A stretch of DNA of 64,000 bases from Paramoeba atlantica (Eukaryota; Protista; Discosea): NCBI GenBank assembly GCA_977017575.1, contig CDRNVI010000063.1, forward strand, positions 1-64,000, given 5' to 3'. Below the pieces are notes generated by a model. The model did no database searches. It was not told where the DNA came from and saw nothing but the letters and a program-made list of their open reading frames with translations. The translations under genes and the position numbers were made by a program. This document shows positions 14,015 to 39,422 of the stretch, piece by piece (within the stretch, counting starts at the first letter, position 1; every line of letters starts with the position of its first letter).

Positions 14015-14497
14015 TTACCATTTTGTCACCTTTTCTCCGTTACTCGCCACACAAGCTTTGAGGCGAGCATCGAAGCTCAAAACCGAATCATAAATATAAC
14101 CTTGAGACAATTTACGCCAAGCTTTACGTACGCTTTTTATGAGATCTTCTTTATTTGTCGGATTGTATTCATCTACAAGACTTTGTACCATGCTCCACAC
14201 GTTTTCTATTGGTGAGAGATCGGGGGAGTTAGGCGGCCAATTTTTCAATAATTTCATTTTGTTGTCGTCAAGGTACGCTTCTGTTTCCTTCGCAGTGTGA
14301 GGTGTTGCCCCATTTTGCTGAAAAATACAGTTTGGGGTGAATGATACTTTTTTTAATGTTTTAATGTACGAAACACATGTAAAAAACGCATGTATGTGTG
14401 CACACGTCGGGCACAGCCGGTGGGAGGGGGAGGGTGGTTCGAACTCCGAGCCACAGTATGCACAGAACAATAGACCCTTGAGGGGGAGTTCTGCCAT
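14015..14497 (-). mobile_element. Chimeric ORF: CxxC...CxxC Zn-ribbon N-terminus fused to the Tc1/mariner DDE C-terminal half (family 1)
   Basis: MAELPLKGLLFCAYCGSEF...LCPTC joined to FQQNGATPH...WPPNSPDLSPIENVWS...; homologous to 32430-32879. Confidence 0.8.
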
Positions 14498-14534
14498 GGG
14501 GGGAGAGATTAAAGAAGGAAAGGACAAAATAAGT

Positions 14535-14568
14535 CAACAAGGTACAGAAACCATATCTTTATCGTTAA
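14535..14568 (-). other. Genomic spliced-leader-derived sequence fused to a 5' UTR (retroposed SL)
   Basis: Minus strand TTAACGATAAAGATATGGTTTCTGTACCTTGTTG followed by ACTTATT (no GT); 27/29 identical to 38870-38898. Confidence 0.8.
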
Positions 14569-14614
14569 AGAATTATTCAGTTTTTAGCTGTTTTTCAGTC
14601 AATATTAGCACTAT

Positions 14615-21490: not shown

Positions 21491-22443
21491 AGTATAAACC
21501 ACATACCCATTTAACATACCCCCCGGTATGTTATCAAGGTATAGGTATGTTAAACATACAGTTTCTGTACCTTGTTGGTACTTAACCTTAGTTCATCCTT
21601 TCTTTCCCCCGCAATGGGCATACTCTTGCTGTATTTTCATGCCCGTTGCCGGTCGGCGCTAAGGCTGGAACTGTCCCCCTTTATCGCTGAAGAAGGGGAC
21701 GCGCCTTCATCCCTTCGCCCCTCCCCGACTCACTCCCCTGGAGTGAATTCTTCTCCCTCTCGGATTCTTTCCTCCCGACCCGTACCTCTCCGAGAGGGCT
21801 AGGCGTCACGGTGGCCTCACTTGAGGACCACTAGACGCGTCCCTCGCTGCCCGCGTTTACGGCTCTCCGCACGTGACGGTCGCCCAGCTCTCCGCACCTC
21901 GGCTCTGTCGCAGCTCTCTGCACCCGGATTGCCCCCGAAACTGTAATATGGGGATTACGCATCCGGCTCTCTGCACCTGCACATGACAACCGAGCTCTCT
22001 GCACCTGGGACGTCAGCTCTCTGCACCCATTCTCCTCCAGCGAGGGCAAATCCTCACGTGATCCACCCGTCGTATGCGGGTAAGGACAATGTGAGACAAA
22101 TCTCTGCAATCTAAGTGCTTGAATAAACAAATATAGGTATGTTAAGTAGACTGGTAATGAAATAGGAAAGAGAAGAAAATCACTTTCACTGTTAGAACCT
22201 GTATCTAAAGATATACCGCGCGTAGTACTAAATGCTAAGATGTTATCAAAATACGTTTAAAAACGCATACAGGAAACATCTTGTTAAAAACGTAAGTGAT
22301 ATTACGGTTGGATTTTGGTACAGTTGCACAATAAAAGCCGTGGGACGAGGGGGGGGGGTATGTTAAGTGTCGTGGGCCAGAATAACATACCCACCGGTAT
22401 GTTATCCAAGGTATAGGTATGTTAAACGGGTATGTGGTTTACT
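21491..22443. mobile_element. Inverted-repeat element (AAACCACATACCCRTTTAACATACC ends) interrupted by an SL-headed insertion
   Basis: 21495-21520 is the inverse of 22416-22441 (1 mismatch); 44/45-bp direct duplication at 21512-21555 and 22383-22427. Confidence 0.7.
21556..22131 (+). ncRNA. SL-headed non-coding structured insertion (SL RNA-derived or SINE-like retroposon)
   Basis: ATACAGTTTCTGTACCTTGTTG followed by GTAC; several stem-loops; GCTCTCYGCACC repeats; A-rich end GAATAAACAAA. Confidence 0.5.
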
Positions 22444-32879: not shown

Positions 32880-34010
32880 TTGTAATCTAGAAACGCTAGT
32901 TGCTCTTTGTTTCAGCCCACTCTTAGGTGCGCAAAGTTCCTATGGTGAGATCTGCAAAACGCAACAAAAATGAGCTCAAACGGCCACCTGGTCGAGAAAA
33001 AAGGGGGGGGGGGGTGACTTTTCGTTGGGAGGGGTTTAGAAGCGTTAGTCCTGATTGCGAAGAACCGTGAAAAAGGGCTTTTTCAATGTTTCGAATCGTG
33101 CAGAGCTTCAAGGTGTGAAGGAAAGTGAATTCCCAGAATATTGGCGATGCACCCAACGAAGGATGGACAAGAATCGGAAACTGTTCTAGAAAGAGGAAAA
33201 AAGGTGCGGAAACTTATGAAAAAATGACCAGGAGTGAAATGAAATCCAAAATGAAGCAACAGAGTGAGTCACATAGACAAAAAAACGTACGAAAAAACTA
33301 GTACGAAAAAACGTACTAGTTTACTGCGTACCAGTTTAATCGCCGTAAGGCACGTACATTCAAGGAAAACAAATAGACACAATTAGCTACTCATTATGCA
33401 CCATACAATGTTTATTTTTACACCTAACTTGTTAGTAGTACTCCACTTGTTCGTTACATTTCATTGATGTATGCGTGACGTACATATTCATAGATCGATT
33501 ATGCGTTTTTTCACCAAGTCGGAGCTCCGTAGAAGTTTACTGGGAGCGCCTGGGCAGGAGTCACCCCTCTAAGTAGAGGGGTGTATTTCAGGTAGACCTA
33601 AATAAGCAATACTGTTGTACTCCTCACCAACACTGATTACACTGGGATTTCTTTTTCGAACTTTTTCGATAAAACATGTAGAACTATTTTTTTTTGGGGG
33701 AAACATTGAAAAGTATACCAATCATTTTGTCATCTACTAGGTTTCCTTTGATAAATATTTTTGGTGCACTGGACATGAGAAAATGTTTGACACCGGGAAC
33801 GGGATATAATTTTCGCGTTTTTGGTGCACTGAATAATCCAGGGATCTATTCCACTCAGTTAGAATAGAAGATGGCGGTACCACTGTTTGTTGCGGACTAT
33901 TCCTCTAGTTCACATTCTGATGTTTCTGTGGATAAGCGCGAACATTTCCTGGTACGGGATGCGGTAGAATATCAGAAAAATAATTCTGAGTTAAATCAAG
34001 ACGGTGCTTA

Positions 34011-34274
34011 CTATACTTCGGGTAAAATAGTAACATCGGCCACTCCCGTCAATTCGTTATCGGAGATGTTAAGACTGATTAAAGAGCGGGGAAGACTTTG
34101 TAGTCCCACAGAACCTGAAAAGCAGTTCTCACTTAACATACAGTGCTCCAGCTGCAAAGGAAGCTTGGAAAAGTTCAACTCCCCCGAGAAACGATTCCTC
34201 TGCAGATAGAGGTGGACCAAACCCTGCGGCAGAGAATCCAACGTGATCGTCCCAAAGAAACGGTTCTCGGACAA
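34011..34274 (-). pseudogene. 3' half of an LRR gene split by retrotransposon 34275-38894
   Basis: LSENRFFGTITLDSLPQGL... joins in frame to ...LSPTLSMLI at 38895; a further LRR-like tail continues in a shifted frame below 34011. Confidence 0.9.
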
Positions 34275-34359
34275 TGATGATGATGATATCATATCTTTTA
34301 AGATAGAGTATTTTGAGGATGTAACTAACTTGCGCATATGACGCTGTTAGGTGCATCCC

Positions 34360-36981
34360 TTATGCGGACAGTGTCTCTGCATCGCTCCATTGCGGGGAAT
34401 CACGCTTATGCCATAATAAGAAGCTGGAACGGATAGCAGCTCGGGAGAGTGACGCCCGACATTTAGCCCCCAAATCTTCGTCCCCTCCAAACAACCGATT
34501 AATATCCGCTGAGGAGGCTACCAGACCACCTCGTGCTCCAATTTCGAATACGAGGAGGTACGTGTTCGGGTGCACTGTTCGTCGTTCGTGTAATAGGGCG
34601 TTGTACTTGAGGCGTTTATATTCATTTGCCTGCATACAGTTTTCTTCCCAGGGGACAGTGAGCTCAACGATGAATTCTGTACCGTCAGTCAGTGCAACGA
34701 ATCCGTCTGGGCGTTGATGATTTGTATTGTTGTGCAGCCAGTGTGGTGGATTTCGGTGACCTAGTAGGTCAAAATGCTGGTATTTTGTATGCGGGGATTC
34801 TTGGATGCGTTTGGCCAGTTCAGCTAGCACTGTGTCGTGTCTGAGGGTATAACGCCCCTGATCAAGAGATGTTTTGCAACCTGAAATAACGTGTCGTACC
34901 GTCTGTGCTTCTTTTCCGCATACCACACATGTCGCATTTGAGAAGTGAAGGCCACATGTCCGAAGGTTTGACTTTGAGGGTAAAGGAGTGGTAAGTAGAA
35001 CCGAGGTCGCAAAACGTGTTAGCTTCGTGCTGTTCAGATTGTTCAGTACGGCGGAAAACTCCTTCGCAAGTTCAGTTTCGGAAGGTGTTGTCCACCATTG
35101 GGCTGCGACCGGTGCTCGTTTCTGAAGGTCTTGTACAATTTTCGCTTCGTAATATTCCCCCATGATTTGTTTGGCGCGTTTTGCGTCGTTTAGATGTTGG
35201 AGGATTTCGCATGCTGGTCGTAGTTGCCCTCTAGCTCGCCTGTTTTGCTCCTCTTCAATGCGGGAACGTAGCGCTGCTTGGACATTGATGTCTCTGGATT
35301 TATTCATTTGAGTCATCGCGGTGGCAGTGCATTCGAACCAAAGCTTAGAGAGTGCTGTTAGGCCCCAACCGCGATCTGAGTACAGGACTTCTGTGCTACC
35401 TTTAGAGGCCATGTTGATCCATTTCCTAATGTAGGAGGTTGCCGTCTTCTGGAGTCGAAGTATAAAGTTGAACGTTATGCATGGATGGACCGTGAAAGCA
35501 TATCGTAGGCGAGCGAGCATGACATTTTGATAGATCCATAGTTTTTCAGGTAGCGTATGTGCGCTTCGGTGCACATTTTGTAACCAAGTCTTAAGTTTCG
35601 CGTTCAACTTTTTATATAGCTCTCTGGCTTGTTGTGCTCCAGGGGCCAGTGTCATTCCCAGGAAGGCACTACCTCTGTCGCAAATGTGGGGAATCGGATC
35701 TCCGTCACATTCAATCTTTGGCCGCCTCGTCATATATCCTGGATGTTCCGTTCCCGCTCGAATGGCCATACATTGTACCCTACTTTTTTCGACGTTGATA
35801 GACAATCCAATGCGTCTAAGGACGATAGAGAGTGATTGTATTGCATTGTTCATGTCGAAATCACTTGACGTAATTATCGTAAGGTCATCAACATAAGCCT
35901 TTAGGAAGTGCTTTGGTGTATCGGGGTAGGATATGCCATAGTACGGGCATGTGCGACGCATGTAGCGGAGGACGATCTCCATCGCAATATTGAAGAGCAC
36001 TGGGGATAGAGTATCACCTTGTAGTACGCCACGTTGCACTGCGATTTCCTTGGTTAGTCCTTGGTCGCATTTGAATCTCGTAGTGGCTGAGAGATACATG
36101 CCTTTGATGTATTCAATGATTTCGGGTGACACGCGCGCCCAGGTGAGAGCTTCGAATATGCTGTCGTGGGAAAGCGAACCGAATGCGTTTCTGAGGTCGA
36201 TCTGGGCCAGACAGTACTGATTCTTCTTGCGCTGATGATGTTGCAGCAGGTTACACAGTGTTTGGGTGTGTTCCAGAGTTCCATTCATCCGTGGTAGAAA
36301 CCCCTTTTGGATAGTCGTCTCAATGACTCCTGAGCTTACAGCATGGTCCAGGAGTTGGTGTCCTATGATGCTGTGAAGAAGTTTTCCCAGACAGCTTGTG
36401 AGTGCTATGGGCCGCCAGTTCCTAGGTATTTTAGGGTCTCCACCTTTGTGGATAAGACGCGTGATCGCTAGAGACCACGACGTGGGGCATGTCCCGAATT
36501 TTATTAAGTCATTAAACATTTTGGCCAGGGAGCTGTATAGTGCTGGGCATCGTTTTAGCGCTGCGTTTGTGATTGTATCTTGCCCTGGTGAGCTAGAGCC
36601 CCGTTTGCTTGAGATGGCATTGACGATTGTTTCGGCTGTTACTGGTATCCACGTCATTTCGTTGGTGGCTCTAGGGCCTAGTATATCGAAGTTAGGGAGC
36701 CGGAGAGTGTCGCGCTCTTTCGTTAGGGTTTGACTGAAATGTTCCTCTATTTCGAGCATTGTACAGCTTGGGTATTGCGTGTTTGTGACTTCATCCTCAC
36801 TGGGTCTGTCCATGGCTTCAGCAGCCGCAGTCCATGGGTTTCTTGAGAAACGTTCATGCGCCCATCTACCTTCTAACGCTCGGCGTTGCACGTCGGCCTC
36901 GTCTGCGTAGATTCTTTCTAGCTTCTTGTTTTCTTTGATTTGGCGGGGTAAGGTACAGTGTATTTCGGGCTTCCGTGCCAT
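34360..36981 (-). CDS. Retrotransposon ORF2: reverse transcriptase, CCHC knuckle, restriction-like endonuclease
   Basis: SSPGQDTI, NWRPIAL, QKGF, IDLRNAFGS, QGDTLSP, YVDD, CVVC..RHVISGC, RPD..VELTVPWEEN. Confidence 0.95.
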   Translation of the reverse strand: MARKPEIHCTLPRQIKENKKLERIYADEADVQRRALEGRWAHERFSRNPWTAAAEAMDRPSEDEVTNTQYPSCTMLEIEEHFSQTLTKERDTLRLPNFDILGPRATNEMTWIPVTAETIVNAISSKRGSSSPGQDTITNAALKRCPALYSSLAKMFNDLIKFGTCPTSWSLAITRLIHKGGDPKIPRNWRPIALTSCLGKLLHSIIGHQLLDHAVSSGVIETTIQKGFLPRMNGTLEHTQTLCNLLQHHQRKKNQYCLAQIDLRNAFGSLSHDSIFEALTWARVSPEIIEYIKGMYLSATTRFKCDQGLTKEIAVQRGVLQGDTLSPVLFNIAMEIVLRYMRRTCPYYGISYPDTPKHFLKAYVDDLTIITSSDFDMNNAIQSLSIVLRRIGLSINVEKSRVQCMAIRAGTEHPGYMTRRPKIECDGDPIPHICDRGSAFLGMTLAPGAQQARELYKKLNAKLKTWLQNVHRSAHTLPEKLWIYQNVMLARLRYAFTVHPCITFNFILRLQKTATSYIRKWINMASKGSTEVLYSDRGWGLTALSKLWFECTATAMTQMNKSRDINVQAALRSRIEEEQNRRARGQLRPACEILQHLNDAKRAKQIMGEYYEAKIVQDLQKRAPVAAQWWTTPSETELAKEFSAVLNNLNSTKLTRFATSVLLTTPLPSKSNLRTCGLHFSNATCVVCGKEAQTVRHVISGCKTSLDQGRYTLRHDTVLAELAKRIQESPHTKYQHFDLLGHRNPPHWLHNNTNHQRPDGFVALTDGTEFIVELTVPWEENCMQANEYKRLKYNALLHERRTVHPNTYLLVFEIGARGGLVASSADINRLFGGDEDLGAKCRASLSRAAIRSSFLLWHKRDSPQWSDAETLSA

Positions 36982-38824
36982 GGGTGAATCTAAGGGATCG
37001 TTTCAGTCGTTGTATATGCTTGGATAGTTCTTGGTTCACTTTTTCTATGGCTAAAGGTCTGTATTTAAATTTGGAATGTCCTTGTTTTGTGCGAAGAACG
37101 AACCCTTTGGTGGGATTCACCTCTTGACTCACCTCAAAGGTTGATACAGCGATAGACGCGGCGAGTATAGCACCGTTCTCCTTTGCTAGGAACGCGTTTG
37201 CGGTGTCTTTGTGTAGGAGCTCCTTGCATCTCCCTAGGGCTCGCTTTTCTACTGAACGCCATTGATCATCGTTTAGTTTGACGCAGAGTTTCCCACCTTG
37301 AATGTCGTTGTGTTGTTGAAGTAGTTCATGCCTTTTCTTGTGTAAGGGATCGTCGTGGTTCGGTGCCGGGCAATGATTCGTTGCTTCTCCGGAGATATTC
37401 GTGGTATTTCTTGCATGCGTGGAAGATTGCAGTTGAGAGAGAGGCCCGTATATCTTGCAGCATCGGTGGGCGCATGAGAGCTTTTCTCGGCATGTGTGCT
37501 TGCAGGGTCCTTTTCCCCCCGCGCCTGGGTACCCAAATGTAACACAAGTCGTACTGGGTCGCGCTGCGTGGTTCGTGCTTTGATCTGGCTGTAAACTCGC
37601 GCTTTTGGGGGCTTCTTTGACGTCATTCTTCCTAGATATGTGCTTTGCTTCGTAGTGCTTCATAGTGCTGCGGTACTTCCAGTCACGCTCGGGGTCCTGT
37701 GTGGGGTCGTATCCTGACTGCATCGATCTCTCGCTTTTCTGTACTGCCTCGTTGACAGGGGCCCCTGCTTTTCTACCAGTTGCGAAAGCTTCACAGAGTT
37801 CAGAGACCCTACTAGTTGCCCATCCTGCCAACACTCCGACCTTTTCCAGAAAGGTTGTATCGTCATCATTCATGTCAGGCACTGGATTCGGGGTGGGCAG
37901 GTCGTTCACTGGGCCTTTGTACTGTGATGTTGCCGCTTTCTCTGCTCTTGAATGCGGGTTTCGCCGACTTCTAGTGGGCATGTCTGTGGCCTTCGGGGAG
38001 TGACCAAGTTCGCGAGTCGAGCTTCTCAAGTCCCATTTTAGCGTTCTGCCGGTGGTCGAGTTCAAATTCGTTGTGTCAAGGGTAGAGGTGCTTGCAGGTT
38101 CTTGATTGTGGGTAGGTCCAAATATTTTGCAACACTTGTGCAGGCACGTTAGCTTGCTAGAGCTTTTGTGTCTGCAGGGTCCTTTGAGAGGTTCCACGGT
38201 CTGTGGTTCGTTGGGTTTCGTAGAACGTGGCTTCGCAATTTGGAAAGGTGTGCCCTCTACTCTTTGTGCCGGTTGGTATGGTGTAATTTCGGTGTTGGAG
38301 TTTGTGTTTCGGGTAATTTTGATGGTAAACTTTTCAAGCCCCGGTACTTTAGCCCCGCTCACGGACTTCAGGACTGCTTTGCCTAGGGCGTTCGGGCTGG
38401 AGTACGAGTCGCTGATGCTAAGGTGGGGGTCATTGAATAGGGAAGTCCAGCTGGCGTGGTAGTACTTTTCCGATGGGTGCGAGTTTCTGCTAATTTCAAT
38501 GTAGTCGCAGGCATCGTGATGTATTAGTTCCTCGAGTGTAGCTGCCTCTATTATCAAATCATGTGGTGTTCCCTTGCCGTTGAGGGCCTTACTAAGTGCA
38601 GCTTCAGCACCTTGTTGTGAAGCGATGCGTTGTCTCACGAGATGACTAAGACAAGCGGACTTTATGTCGGGGTAGTAGTTCCAAAGCATACTATCCATCG
38701 TGCGTATTTTGACGGATCGTGCCCGGCTCTGGATGAAATGCAAAGACTGTTTCCGCGCAACGCCGGGTCCTTGAGGAAGGCCTGGTGTTGCATTTTCCTC
38801 CTGTGTGGCGGTTCTGGTTGTCAT
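36866..38824 (-). CDS. Retrotransposon ORF1 / N-terminal region with two C-x-H-x-C-x4-C-x-H-x-C-C type Zn fingers
   Basis: GPCRHKSSSKLTCLHKCCKIFGP and GPCKHTCREKLSCAHRCCKIYGP; overlaps ORF2 by 116 nt, with ORF2 in the +1 frame. Confidence 0.85.
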   Translation of the reverse strand: MTTRTATQEENATPGLPQGPGVARKQSLHFIQSRARSVKIRTMDSMLWNYYPDIKSACLSHLVRQRIASQQGAEAALSKALNGKGTPHDLIIEAATLEELIHHDACDYIEISRNSHPSEKYYHASWTSLFNDPHLSISDSYSSPNALGKAVLKSVSGAKVPGLEKFTIKITRNTNSNTEITPYQPAQRVEGTPFQIAKPRSTKPNEPQTVEPLKGPCRHKSSSKLTCLHKCCKIFGPTHNQEPASTSTLDTTNLNSTTGRTLKWDLRSSTRELGHSPKATDMPTRSRRNPHSRAEKAATSQYKGPVNDLPTPNPVPDMNDDDTTFLEKVGVLAGWATSRVSELCEAFATGRKAGAPVNEAVQKSERSMQSGYDPTQDPERDWKYRSTMKHYEAKHISRKNDVKEAPKSASLQPDQSTNHAARPSTTCVTFGYPGAGGKGPCKHTCREKLSCAHRCCKIYGPLSQLQSSTHARNTTNISGEATNHCPAPNHDDPLHKKRHELLQQHNDIQGGKLCVKLNDDQWRSVEKRALGRCKELLHKDTANAFLAKENGAILAASIAVSTFEVSQEVNPTKGFVLRTKQGHSKFKYRPLAIEKVNQELSKHIQRLKRSLRFTHGTEARNTLYLTPPNQRKQEARKNLRRRGRRATPSVRR

Positions 38825-38869
38825 GGAGGTTTCATACAGTTAGTACCAAGTAGAAAAATTAAAATAATT

Positions 38870-38898
38870 CAACAAGGTACAGAAACTGTATCTTTATC
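38870..38898 (-). other. Spliced-leader-derived 29-mer forming the 5' end of the retrotransposon
   Basis: GATAAAGATACAGTTTCTGTACCTTGTTG; ACAGTTTCTGTAC...TTG is the conserved 3' block of kinetoplastid SL exons (T. brucei ...AACAGTTTCTGTACTATATTG). Confidence 0.85.
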
Positions 38899-39422
38899 AA
38901 CATACTCAGTGTAGGGGAAAGTTGACTCAAGTCAACGGGACCGGTGAATTGGTTTCCCGGGATGTTAAGACGCACCAGCGCCGGGGGAAGACTCGCAAGT
39001 TTGACCTCTTCTTGAAAAAGATTATCATACAGCACCACCTCCTCCAGGGAGACGGGAAGCGTGTCCCAGGGAATGCCCCCTGTGAGAAATGTTTTTGTGA
39101 GGTAGAGCATTTGCGTGGTTGCGGGAAGCGCCCTGAACTCCAGGTATCCTCTGTAAAAGTCGCGCAGGACAACCACGCGCAGCCTTCCCTGGGGGTCACA
39201 TCGGAACCCCTCCCAGGTACACTCCGAGACGGGCTCACGCCCACACCATGTGAAACGTGAGAGCACCCAGCTCGAGTGGGGGTTCTCAACGCGATGTACG
39301 AGACGCTCCATTTGCTCGTCATGAGGAAGAAGCGCTGCAATGACCTTTCCGCGACGAACGTGGACGTCGTCCACAGTATGGAGGAGAGAGAAGGCGAGGG
39401 TAGAAAGGAGGAATAAGGGCAT
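38895..39422 (-). pseudogene. 5' half of the LRR gene split by the full-length retrotransposon
   Basis: RRGKV..LLP...NPHSSW...CTWEGFRC cap, then LRRs ending LSQLSPTLSMLI. Confidence 0.9.

What the first reader, a model, noticed from the sequence alone, without database searches (positions are those of the whole stretch)
38824..38898. Full-length retrotransposon starts with the spliced leader: transposition via trans-spliced mRNA
Seen: the element's 5' junction is a 29-nt SL-like block joined directly (no GT) to a 45-nt 5' UTR and the ORF1 ATG, with GATA microhomology to the LRR target. The same SL variant (…TTTCTGTACCTTGTTG) occurs at two other unrelated loci. Known: kinetoplastid mRNAs receive the SL by trans-splicing. 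SLACS/CZAR/CRE sit inside SL genes, which is a different configuration. Inference: the element has no promoter or ribozyme; it is co-transcribed in the host polycistron, gains its 5' end by trans-splicing, and RT copies the SL into DNA. The UTR after the SL has no AG, so the next round would have to use an AG inside the integrated SL or in host sequence, predicting nested SL relics.
Basis: partly seen in the sequence, partly recalled or inferred. Interest (0 to 1): 0.85.

Follow-up and report, generated by a model that had tools for sequence, protein, structure and literature searches.

The report
Retrotransposon headed by host spliced leader
A young R2-type jumping gene in a leucine-rich-repeat gene of a kinetoplastid-like protist begins with a DNA copy of the last 27-29 bases of the cell's own spliced leader, so it was copied from leader-carrying RNA; how that leader is put on again in each round is still unsolved.

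Summary
On the minus strand, 38870-38898 equals the 3' end of the host's 38-nt spliced leader (SL). I read that SL from true SL RNA gene arrays elsewhere in the genome. It is joined exactly at the exon end to a 45-nt AG-free UTR and an ATG.

An empty allele or paralog shows that SL piece and element arrived together: 4622 nt (34275-38896) replace 2 nt, with no duplication.

The element is an R2-group LINE with one ORF, RT and a restriction-like endonuclease. The window copy's "ORF1/ORF2" split comes from a private 7-nt insertion.

Nested relics after the SL's internal AGs also exist genome-wide (14 + 2, at least 9 families).

Those relics are rare and absent from this family. No copy has an AG acceptor at the UTR start, so trans-splicing is likely but renewal is unexplained.

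Two new leads:
- One SL RNA gene is fused at its exon end to a LINE UTR.
- R2-like UTRs carry boxes complementary to the SL.

No RNA data were available. Earlier reports of this scan describe the same phenomenon on other DNA of this genome.

The parts
34275..38896 (-). Inserted retrotransposon copy, 4622 nt (SL-derived head, UTR, frameshifted ORF, 3' UTR, TCA tail)
   Evidence: DNA contigs of runs X1 and X2 join 34274 to 38897 with only AT between them. The 97%-identical locus C20 (L083) reads ATGTTGA-AT-TTGTCC. Four other copies are 97-99% identical over the same extent.
38870..38898 (-). SL-derived head: the last 27 nt of the host SL (38870-38896) plus 2 nt (GA, 38897-38898) shared with the target
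   Evidence: Identical to the 3' end of the SL exon in SL RNA gene arrays. Ends exactly at the exon/intron boundary. Absent from the empty site.
38825..38869 (-). 45-nt 5' UTR, pyrimidine-rich, without any AG
   Evidence: Its start AATTATTTT is shared with many other SL-headed families.
38834..38847 (-). Anti-SL box GGTAC-TA-ACTGTAT, complementary to SL segments ATACAGTT and GTACC
   Evidence: The predicted head-UTR hairpin has -50.8 kcal/mol for the first 197 nt, z = -2.8. SL complementarity of R2-like UTRs against other SL-headed UTRs gives Mann-Whitney p = 2e-5.
36866..38824 (-).
   Evidence: No Pfam or PDB sequence match. At least 103 related loci in the genome.
36953..36962 (-). Private 7-nt insertion (TACACTG) that shifts the frame and splits the single ORF
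   Evidence: Absent from copies C46, C23 and C14 and from the contigs of runs X1-X3 (table 4). Copy C46 has one open frame of 1484 aa.
34360..36981 (-). C-terminal part of the ORF. RT domain about 35770-36441 (YVDD at 35884-35895). CCHC at 34876-34929. RHD, RPD, E and KxxKY endonuclease motifs at 34603-34842.
   Evidence: Pfam RVT_1 E = 6e-29 and zf-RVT. Best solved relative is the R2 protein of Bombyx mori, 8gh6, E = 3.5e-28. Motifs read.
34275..34286 (-). 3' tail (TCA)4; no poly(A)
   Evidence: The five copies end in 2 to 4 TCA units.
38897..39422 (-). Upstream half of the interrupted leucine-rich-repeat gene (the target)
   Evidence: The coding repeat continues downstream of the insertion from 34274.

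Best explanation
This is a recent insertion of a low-copy R2-group non-LTR retrotransposon. It has a single ORF with Cys/His knuckles, a reverse transcriptase and a C-terminal restriction-like endonuclease, and it ends in a (TCA)n tail.

Its RNA template carried the host spliced-leader exon at its 5' end, joined to the element's UTR exactly where the SL RNA is cut in trans-splicing. Target-primed reverse transcription copied the RNA, leader included. The copy was joined to the target after losing the first 9-11 leader bases. It replaced 2 bp of an LRR gene and made no target duplication.

The leader was most likely acquired by SL trans-splicing of an element transcript made within a host polycistron.

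Shown: the leader's identity, its arrival together with the element, variable leader lengths among copies, the family type, and re-splicing of leader-headed DNA copies elsewhere in the genome.

Inferred: that trans-splicing rather than another route put the leader on this element's RNA, and where the source copy lies.
For: - Host SL defined from 34 SL RNA genes with promoter context and a GTATGAG intron; the head is identical to its 3' end and stops at the exon boundary.
- The empty site lacks both SL and element.
- Five copies, 97-99% identical, sit in unrelated flanks with SL pieces of 27-29, 28, 28, 24 and 8 nt. Their differences are mostly private, giving a star-like pattern.
- About 900 SL blocks genome-wide head many different UTRs. 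In one host gene array the SL junction coincides with a genomic AG acceptor (L001-L004).
- Relics begin exactly after the SL's internal AGs: 16 nt 14 times in at least 9 families, and 22 nt twice. One case is a related R2-like family where a fresh head, again starting at nt 11, sits on a 16-nt relic plus the same type of UTR (L075).
- All nine readable heads of related R2-like families are SL-headed.
- The element lies in sense orientation within a long run of minus-strand ORFs.
Against: - No RNA run holds the region, so no transcript or splice site was seen.
- Every copy has TTG, not AG, before the UTR. None of 33 genomic AG+AATTATTTTC sites continues as any SL-headed UTR. No source locus with a canonical acceptor was therefore found.
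- Nested relics are rare and, with one possible exception (L070, 16+16), one layer deep. Leader-headed copies seldom reproduce by re-splicing at internal AGs.
- Relics of 10, 7 and 5 nt do not follow an AG.
- R2-like heads cluster at SL nt 11, which trans-splicing alone does not explain.
Confidence: 0.58

Rival explanations
1. The RNA is born with the leader. A master copy sits in an SL RNA gene exactly at the exon end, a CRE/SLACS-like lifestyle. The SL gene promoter then transcribes leader plus element as one RNA, and no acceptor AG is needed. Copies outside SL genes are off-target daughters.
For: One SL RNA gene (C41:280831-280904) has the 15-nt promoter-proximal context and the full exon fused directly to the UTR of a LINE family with at least 14 copies. 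No AG acceptor exists at any UTR start tested. One of the five copies of this family (C23) landed inside the SL head of a SINE, near the position where CRE-clade elements cut the SL (insertion site between nt 11 and 12 from PMC5814959). SL arrays lie at contig ends and may be under-assembled.
Against: Only 1 of 34 SL genes is so occupied, by an unrelated poly(A)-type family, and none by this family, although would have found it. Related R2-like UTRs begin with runs of 9-11 T. From general knowledge of trypanosomatid SL RNA genes, such runs would be expected to terminate SL-gene transcription. The L075 stack shows a leader added at an internal AG, which is splicing and not transcription.
Confidence: 0.2
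2. The SL piece is now an inherited 5'-terminal module of R2-like elements and their SINEs, comparable to the shared Pr77 head of trypanosomatid ingi/L1Tc elements. It passes from DNA to RNA to DNA. It is kept identical to the SL by function, for example pairing with the anti-SL box, or it is refreshed when the reverse transcriptase switches template onto abundant SL-bearing RNAs.
For: Most heads of this family, of related R2-like families and of the SINE start at the same SL position, nt 11. No head of this family exceeds 29 nt. The UTRs carry conserved boxes complementary to the SL. Irregular partial SL duplications look like misaligned template switches. No AG is needed.
Against: No copy carries a parent's flank upstream of the head. 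Some heads reach nt 8-9 (L033, L077, L091). Poly(A)-type LINE families carry full-length leaders. In L075 a fresh head starting at nt 11 was added onto an older, AG-trimmed one, so the nt-11 start is made anew rather than inherited. No promoter was identified.
Confidence: 0.15
3. The junction arose at the DNA level, by insertion next to a pre-existing SL relic or by recombination with an SL gene, or the similarity is chance.
For: SL relics are common in this genome, about 900.
Against: The empty site contains no SL. The five copies share the exact SL/UTR junction in different flanks. The chance expectation for the 19-mer is 0.01 per window.
Confidence: 0.02

Closest known systems
CRE clade of the R2 group (SLACS, CZAR, CRE1/CRE2 of trypanosomatids)
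   Same: Euglenozoan host. Single ORF with zinc-knuckle-like motifs, RT and a C-terminal restriction-like endonuclease (clade description in PMC12278014). Intimate link with the spliced leader. The commonest head start (SL nt 11 of 38) corresponds, when the SLs are aligned from their 3' ends, to the CRE-clade insertion point between nt 11 and 12 of the 39-nt mini-exon (PMC5814959).
   Different: Not inserted in SL RNA genes. The SL lies at the element's own 5' end, ends at the exon boundary and lacks the intron. (TCA)n tail instead of poly(A). No target duplication in the window copy. Clade membership by RT phylogeny was not tested.
R2 elements of animals
   Same: Best solved-structure relative (8gh6, E = 3.5e-28). 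RT followed by CCHC and a PD-(D/E)XK nuclease. Tiny target deletion. No poly(A). 5' ends that carry host RNA sequence through co-transcription.
   Different: R2 gets its 5' end by self-cleavage of a 28S co-transcript with an HDV-like ribozyme. Here no ribozyme family matched and the host-derived 5' sequence is the spliced leader. Insertion sites are dispersed.
mRNA recycling in dinoflagellates (DNA-encoded SL relics on retrogenes; Slamovits and Keeling, as summarised in PMC3229502)
   Same: DNA copies of processed RNAs tagged by the SL. Relict leaders are truncated at the SL's internal AG and stacked directly behind a complete leader. Tandem arrays of SL-headed units.
   Different: Different eukaryotic supergroup and a different SL. 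Here the tagged sequences are largely autonomous LINE families and their SINEs. Stacks are rare (about 2-4% here, against 22-25% of transcripts there).
ingi/L1Tc with the Pr77 head
   Same: A shared 5'-terminal module across autonomous and non-autonomous retroposons of a kinetoplastid.
   Different: Pr77 is an internal promoter and ribozyme that gives unspliced transcripts without SL (PMC1874656, PMC5814959). Those elements have an APE endonuclease. Here the shared module is the host SL itself.

Membership tests
[quoted passage not shown] | Single ORF with RT followed by a CCHC motif and a PD-(D/E)XK restriction-like endonuclease | tested here: met
   Copy C46 has one 1484-aa ORF. RVT_1 E = 6e-29. 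CVVC..H....C, RHD, RPD, E and KRLKY motifs. R2 of Bombyx mori is the best PDB match.
[quoted passage not shown] | No apurinic/apyrimidinic-type endonuclease | tested here: met
   No PF03372 or PF14529 hit in the window ORFs, nor in three longer homologs, even at E up to 5.
[quoted passage not shown] | Small target deletion, or little or no duplication, at insertion | tested here: met
   4622 nt replace AT in the window copy. Copy C14 may have a 10-bp duplication, but it lies in a tandem-repeat target and is ambiguous.
CRE clade (SLACS/CZAR/CRE) | Insertion in SL RNA genes at one fixed position of the mini-exon | tested here: not met
   The five copies lie in an LRR gene, an AT-rich repeat, a SINE's SL head, a tandem repeat and unique DNA. 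No SL gene carries this family.
CRE clade (SLACS/CZAR/CRE) | Poly(A) tail and target-site duplications | tested here: not met
   (TCA)2-4 tail in all copies. No duplication in the window copy.
CRE clade (SLACS/CZAR/CRE) | RT groups with CRE-clade RTs in a phylogeny | not tested
SL-tagged retrocopies (mRNA recycling type) | DNA-encoded SL that ends exactly at the SL exon boundary, at the 5' end of a retrocopy | tested here: met
SL-tagged retrocopies (mRNA recycling type) | Relict leaders truncated at an internal AG, stacked behind a full leader | tested here: met
   Met genome-wide: 14 relics of 16 nt and 2 of 22 nt. None in the five copies of this family.
SL-tagged retrocopies (mRNA recycling type) | A source locus with an AG acceptor at the position of the SL junction | tested here: not met
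   None for this family, nor for families whose UTR starts AATTATTTTC. Met only for one host gene array (L001-L004).
HDV-like ribozyme 5' processing (R2, L1Tc) | Self-cleaving ribozyme at the element's 5' end | tested here: inconclusive
   No Rfam match at E up to 1 in 34000-39200. Such ribozymes are hard to find by sequence. The only predicted 5' structure is the SL-UTR hairpin.

The most novel reading that the evidence does not exclude
R2-group retrotransposons of this lineage have built the host spliced leader into their life cycle. A box in the 5' UTR that pairs with the leader lets the element recapture or keep a leader in every round without a canonical AG acceptor, a promoter or a ribozyme. 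It could do so by guiding SL addition to the old junction, or by guiding the reverse transcriptase onto SL-bearing RNA. The ancestral SL-cutting endonuclease would then set the head's start at nt 11.
Probability: 0.2. Interest if true: 0.9.

Novelty: new variant of a known kind. Interest (0 to 1): 0.72.

Why it matters
Mobile elements need a way to regain a complete 5' end in every generation. The known solutions are internal promoters, ribozymes and residence in a host RNA gene. Here whole lineages of LINEs and SINEs in a polycistronically transcribing protist instead carry the host's own spliced leader. That would be a further solution, and one tied to the defining RNA-processing step of Euglenozoa.

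It also makes about 900 DNA-encoded leaders a natural record of RNA-to-DNA flow outside dinoflagellates. I found no report of this for kinetoplastids or diplonemids in the papers I could search.

The lack of any AG acceptor, the nt-11 head start that matches the CRE-clade cutting site, and the SL-complementary UTR boxes turn 'how is the leader renewed' into a question that can be tested directly.

Tried and rejected
- **RNA evidence:** the run search found only DNA-type contig sets plus one doubtful 'RNA?' set that holds next to none of the stretch. Its two contigs merely end in the SL, as any k-mer assembly would. Nothing could be said on transcripts.
- **SL RNA gene at 21559:** rejected. It is a SINE-like family whose body happens to begin with GTAC.
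- **Ribozyme or known RNA family in the element:** no Rfam match.
- **Function of the N-terminal 650 aa:** no Pfam or PDB sequence match. No structure prediction was run.
- **Cross-species test** (do relatives in a host with another SL carry that SL?): the closest database homolog checked lies in another assembly with the same SL (same head as L023). More distant ones are 5'-truncated metagenome contigs without heads. One was not on record.
- **Master copy with an AG acceptor:** not found (the last letter of the pattern excludes a quarter of sites).
- **Reading the DNA behind the SL-gene/LINE fusion at C41:** I did not walk along it with patterns beyond two hypothesis tests.
- **Pfam RT scan** to see whether an RT follows that junction: only 150 of 1851 candidates were scored, so it is uninformative.
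- **SL sequence in the literature:** no paper holds it.
- **Organism:** not identified.
Full report
**What is in the window.**

The feature lies on the minus strand. Reading 38898 down to 38870 gives GATAAAGATACAGTTTCTGTACCTTGTTG. A 45-nt pyrimidine-rich UTR without any AG follows (38869-38825), then an ATG at 38824.

The core 19-mer has exact matches at 38870(-) and 21559(+) and a 2-mismatch match at 14535(-). Chance would give 0.01 matches.

**Is it the host's spliced leader?**

Yes. The genome (45.7 Mb, 248 contigs; the window is C63:1-64000) holds about 900 copies of the 19-mer at up to one mismatch. Of these, 171 are followed by GTA.

Among the GTA-followed sites, two kinds separate cleanly.

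- **True SL RNA genes.** They share an upstream context, carry the exon AACTTTAACGATAAAGATACAGTTTCTGTACCTTGTTG (38 nt), and have an intron starting GTATGAGAAGC, the kinetoplastid-type start. With 15 nt of upstream context I count 34 such genes, in arrays on C3, C11, C24, C74, C97 and C107.
- **A SINE-like family.** Its body merely begins with GTAC.

The window block is the exact 3' end of the exon and stops at the exon/intron boundary.

**The leader came in with the element.**

DNA contigs of two runs join 34274 to 38897 with only AT between them. The assembly holds a 97%-identical locus on C20 that reads ATGTTGA-AT-TTGTCC.

The insertion is therefore 34275-38896 (4622 nt). It replaced 2 bp of a leucine-rich-repeat codon run and made no target duplication. 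The site held no leader sequence before.

G38898 and A38897 belong to both the target and the leader. So 27 nt are certainly leader-derived and the microhomology is GA.

**What the element is.**

Four further copies exist, on C46, C23, C14 and C51, 97-99% identical over the same 4.62 kb.

Copy C46 has a single open frame of 1484 aa. The other copies are broken elsewhere (the insertion is also absent from read contigs).

The protein has these features:

- Two Cys/His knuckles in an otherwise unmatched N-terminal half.
- An RT domain (Pfam RVT_1, E = 6e-29).
- A C-terminal CCHC motif followed by RHD, RPD, E and KxxKY motifs, that is a restriction-like endonuclease.
- No AP-type endonuclease.

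The best solved relative is the R2 protein of Bombyx mori (E = 3.5e-28). The element ends in (TCA)2-4, not poly(A). This places it in the R2 group, which comprises the CRE, NeSL, R2, R4 and Hero clades (PMC3636483). I did not resolve the clade.

The genome holds at least 103 loci with a related N-terminus, many with long open frames, and 1851 RT candidates.

The five copies share the exact leader/UTR junction but lie in unrelated flanks. Their leader pieces are as follows.

| Copy | Leader piece | Note |
|---|---|---|
| Window (C63) | 27-29 nt | In an LRR gene |
| C46 | 28 nt | One substitution in the piece |
| C23 | 28 nt | Inside the SL head of a SINE |
| C14 | 24 nt | 21 extra nucleotides at the junction |
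| C51 | 8 nt | 12-nt UTR deletion |

No copy shows an upstream extension other than leader sequence. Differences among copies are mostly private, which indicates that none of the assembled copies is the source of the others.

**The wider phenomenon.**

In an unselected sample of 30 leader sites, the full leader is followed by many different UTRs and start codons. It is often preceded by the poly(A) tail of another element.

In one 5.09-kb host gene array, the leader junction coincides with a genomic AG|ACTTTTC acceptor that is present just upstream. This shows ordinary AG-dependent trans-splicing followed by reverse transcription.

All nine readable 5' ends of related R2-like families are leader-headed, starting at nt 8 to 15 and mostly at nt 11. 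Poly(A)-type LINE families carry the full leader.

The window's other two leader sites fit the same pattern:

- A 578-nt SINE-like retroposon at 21554-22131, with a 14-bp target duplication.
- A retrocopy of about 220 nt with a short A-tail at 14350-14571. It sits inside a Tc1/mariner-type transposase gene.

**The predicted nested relics exist but are a side route.**

A leader followed directly by its own last 16 nt (the part after ACAG) occurs 14 times exactly. Twelve of these were read, in at least nine different families. One is an R2-like family with the same kind of UTR as ours, in which the outer, fresh head again starts at nt 11.

The 22-nt relic, which follows AAAG, occurs twice. This is the dinoflagellate pattern described in PMC3229502. 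It shows that leader-headed DNA copies are transcribed, re-spliced at internal AGs and copied again.

Stacks of all kinds number about 35 among roughly 900 heads. Apart from one possible 16+16 case (L070) they are one layer deep. Relics of 10, 7 and 5 nt do not follow an AG. None occurs in this family.

**The unsolved step.**

Every new RNA needs the junction TTG|AATTATTTT, yet no source locus with a canonical acceptor was found.

- All five copies have TTG, not AG, before the UTR.
- 98 sites carry the leader end (CCTTGTTG) joined to AATTATTTTC, spread over roughly twelve UTR types.
- Of 33 genomic AG+AATTATTTTC sites, none continues as any of those UTRs.

A source copy with a canonical acceptor at the UTR start is therefore missing from the assembly.

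**Two further observations bear on the unsolved step.**

First, one SL RNA gene (C41:280831-280904) has its promoter-proximal context and full exon fused directly to the UTR of a poly(A)-type LINE family with at least 14 copies. From such a locus the SL promoter could make RNA that is born with the leader.

No SL gene carries our family, although would have found it. I could not read beyond that junction.

Second, the UTR holds GGTAC-TA-ACTGTAT (38834-38847), which is complementary to the leader segments ATACAGTT and GTACC. The first 197 nt fold with that head-UTR hairpin (z = -2.8).

Related R2-like families carry boxes complementary to the same or other parts of the leader, with perfect matches of up to 14 nt. 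Other leader-headed UTRs do not (Mann-Whitney p = 2e-5 on duplex z-scores; median longest match 8 against 5 nt). The R2-like families are related to one another, so these are not nine independent cases. At least three different box types exist.

**Other regularities.**

The commonest head start, nt 11 of 38, corresponds when the leaders are aligned from their 3' ends to the point where SLACS and CZAR interrupt the 39-nt mini-exon, between nt 11 and 12 (PMC5814959).

One of the five copies (C23) is inserted within the leader head of a SINE, removing about nt 7-14.

Insertions of this and related families and of the SINE recur just after the LPxxLxxL part of LRR repeats. On the C20 haplotype or paralog, a different related element sits one repeat further along at the matching motif position.

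These points suggest, but do not prove, that the endonuclease retains sequence preferences inherited from SL-targeting ancestors.

**Verdict.**

The core inference, that a leader-bearing RNA was reverse-transcribed, is strongly supported.

Acquisition by trans-splicing is the most economical reading, but it was not observed, and its acceptor is missing. The proposed route for the next round is real but minor.

I searched for a report of leader-headed retrotransposons in kinetoplastids or diplonemids and found none.

Earlier reports of this scan describe the same phenomenon elsewhere in this genome. The empty site, the family census, the test for a missing acceptor, the SL-gene fusion and the anti-SL boxes are my own checks.

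Noticed in passing
window 21554-22131 (+): A 578-nt SINE-like retroposon headed by about 22-24 nt of the SL, with a (CAA)-type tail. It is flanked by a 14-bp target duplication TATAGGTATGTTAA (21540-21553 and 22132-22145). It belongs to a family of more than 100 copies whose body starts with GTAC, which mimics the SL RNA 5' splice site.
   Followed up: partly
window 14350-14571 (-): A retrocopy of about 220 nt with a nearly full SL (2 substitutions), a UTR, a short Cys-rich ORF and a short A-tail. It is inserted in a Tc1/mariner-type (DDE_3) transposase gene.
   Followed up: partly
G000 C41:280831-280904 (+): An SL RNA gene whose promoter-proximal context and complete exon are fused directly to the UTR of a poly(A)-type LINE family (the same UTR as L017, at least 14 copies). 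It is a candidate SL-promoter-driven master copy. The downstream DNA could not be fetched.
   Followed up: partly
L083 (G000 C20:395293-398723), positions about 2060-2160: On the haplotype or paralog that lacks the window's insertion, a different R2-like element (about 47% identical N-terminus) sits one LRR repeat further along, at the matching motif position. Its 5' junction is duplicated: target 8-mer, 15 nt of SL, TT, the target 8-mer again, then SL from nt 11.
   Followed up: partly
G000 C21:255-11695 and C22:137424-155712: Tandem arrays with a period of about 2.28 kb, in which every unit starts with the SL followed by the same UTR. They resemble the SL-tagged tandem gene arrays of dinoflagellates.
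   Followed up: no
L001-L004 (G000 C1:8252-26548): A 5093-bp tandem array in which a 34-nt 5' UTR occurs twice in each unit. It appears once behind a genomic AG and once behind a DNA-encoded SL, so a cDNA-derived copy has been written back into its own gene.
   Followed up: no
L066-L069, L083-L107 (heads of R2-like families): The 5' UTRs are poor in AG downstream of a pyrimidine tract. In the window element the first AG lies 10 nt after the ATG, and in another family about 90 nt after the head. This could be avoidance of internal trans-splice acceptors.
   Followed up: no
G000 contigs C143-C174: AT-rich low-complexity matches cluster in the high-numbered contigs. These contigs may belong to another organism or compartment.
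   Followed up: no
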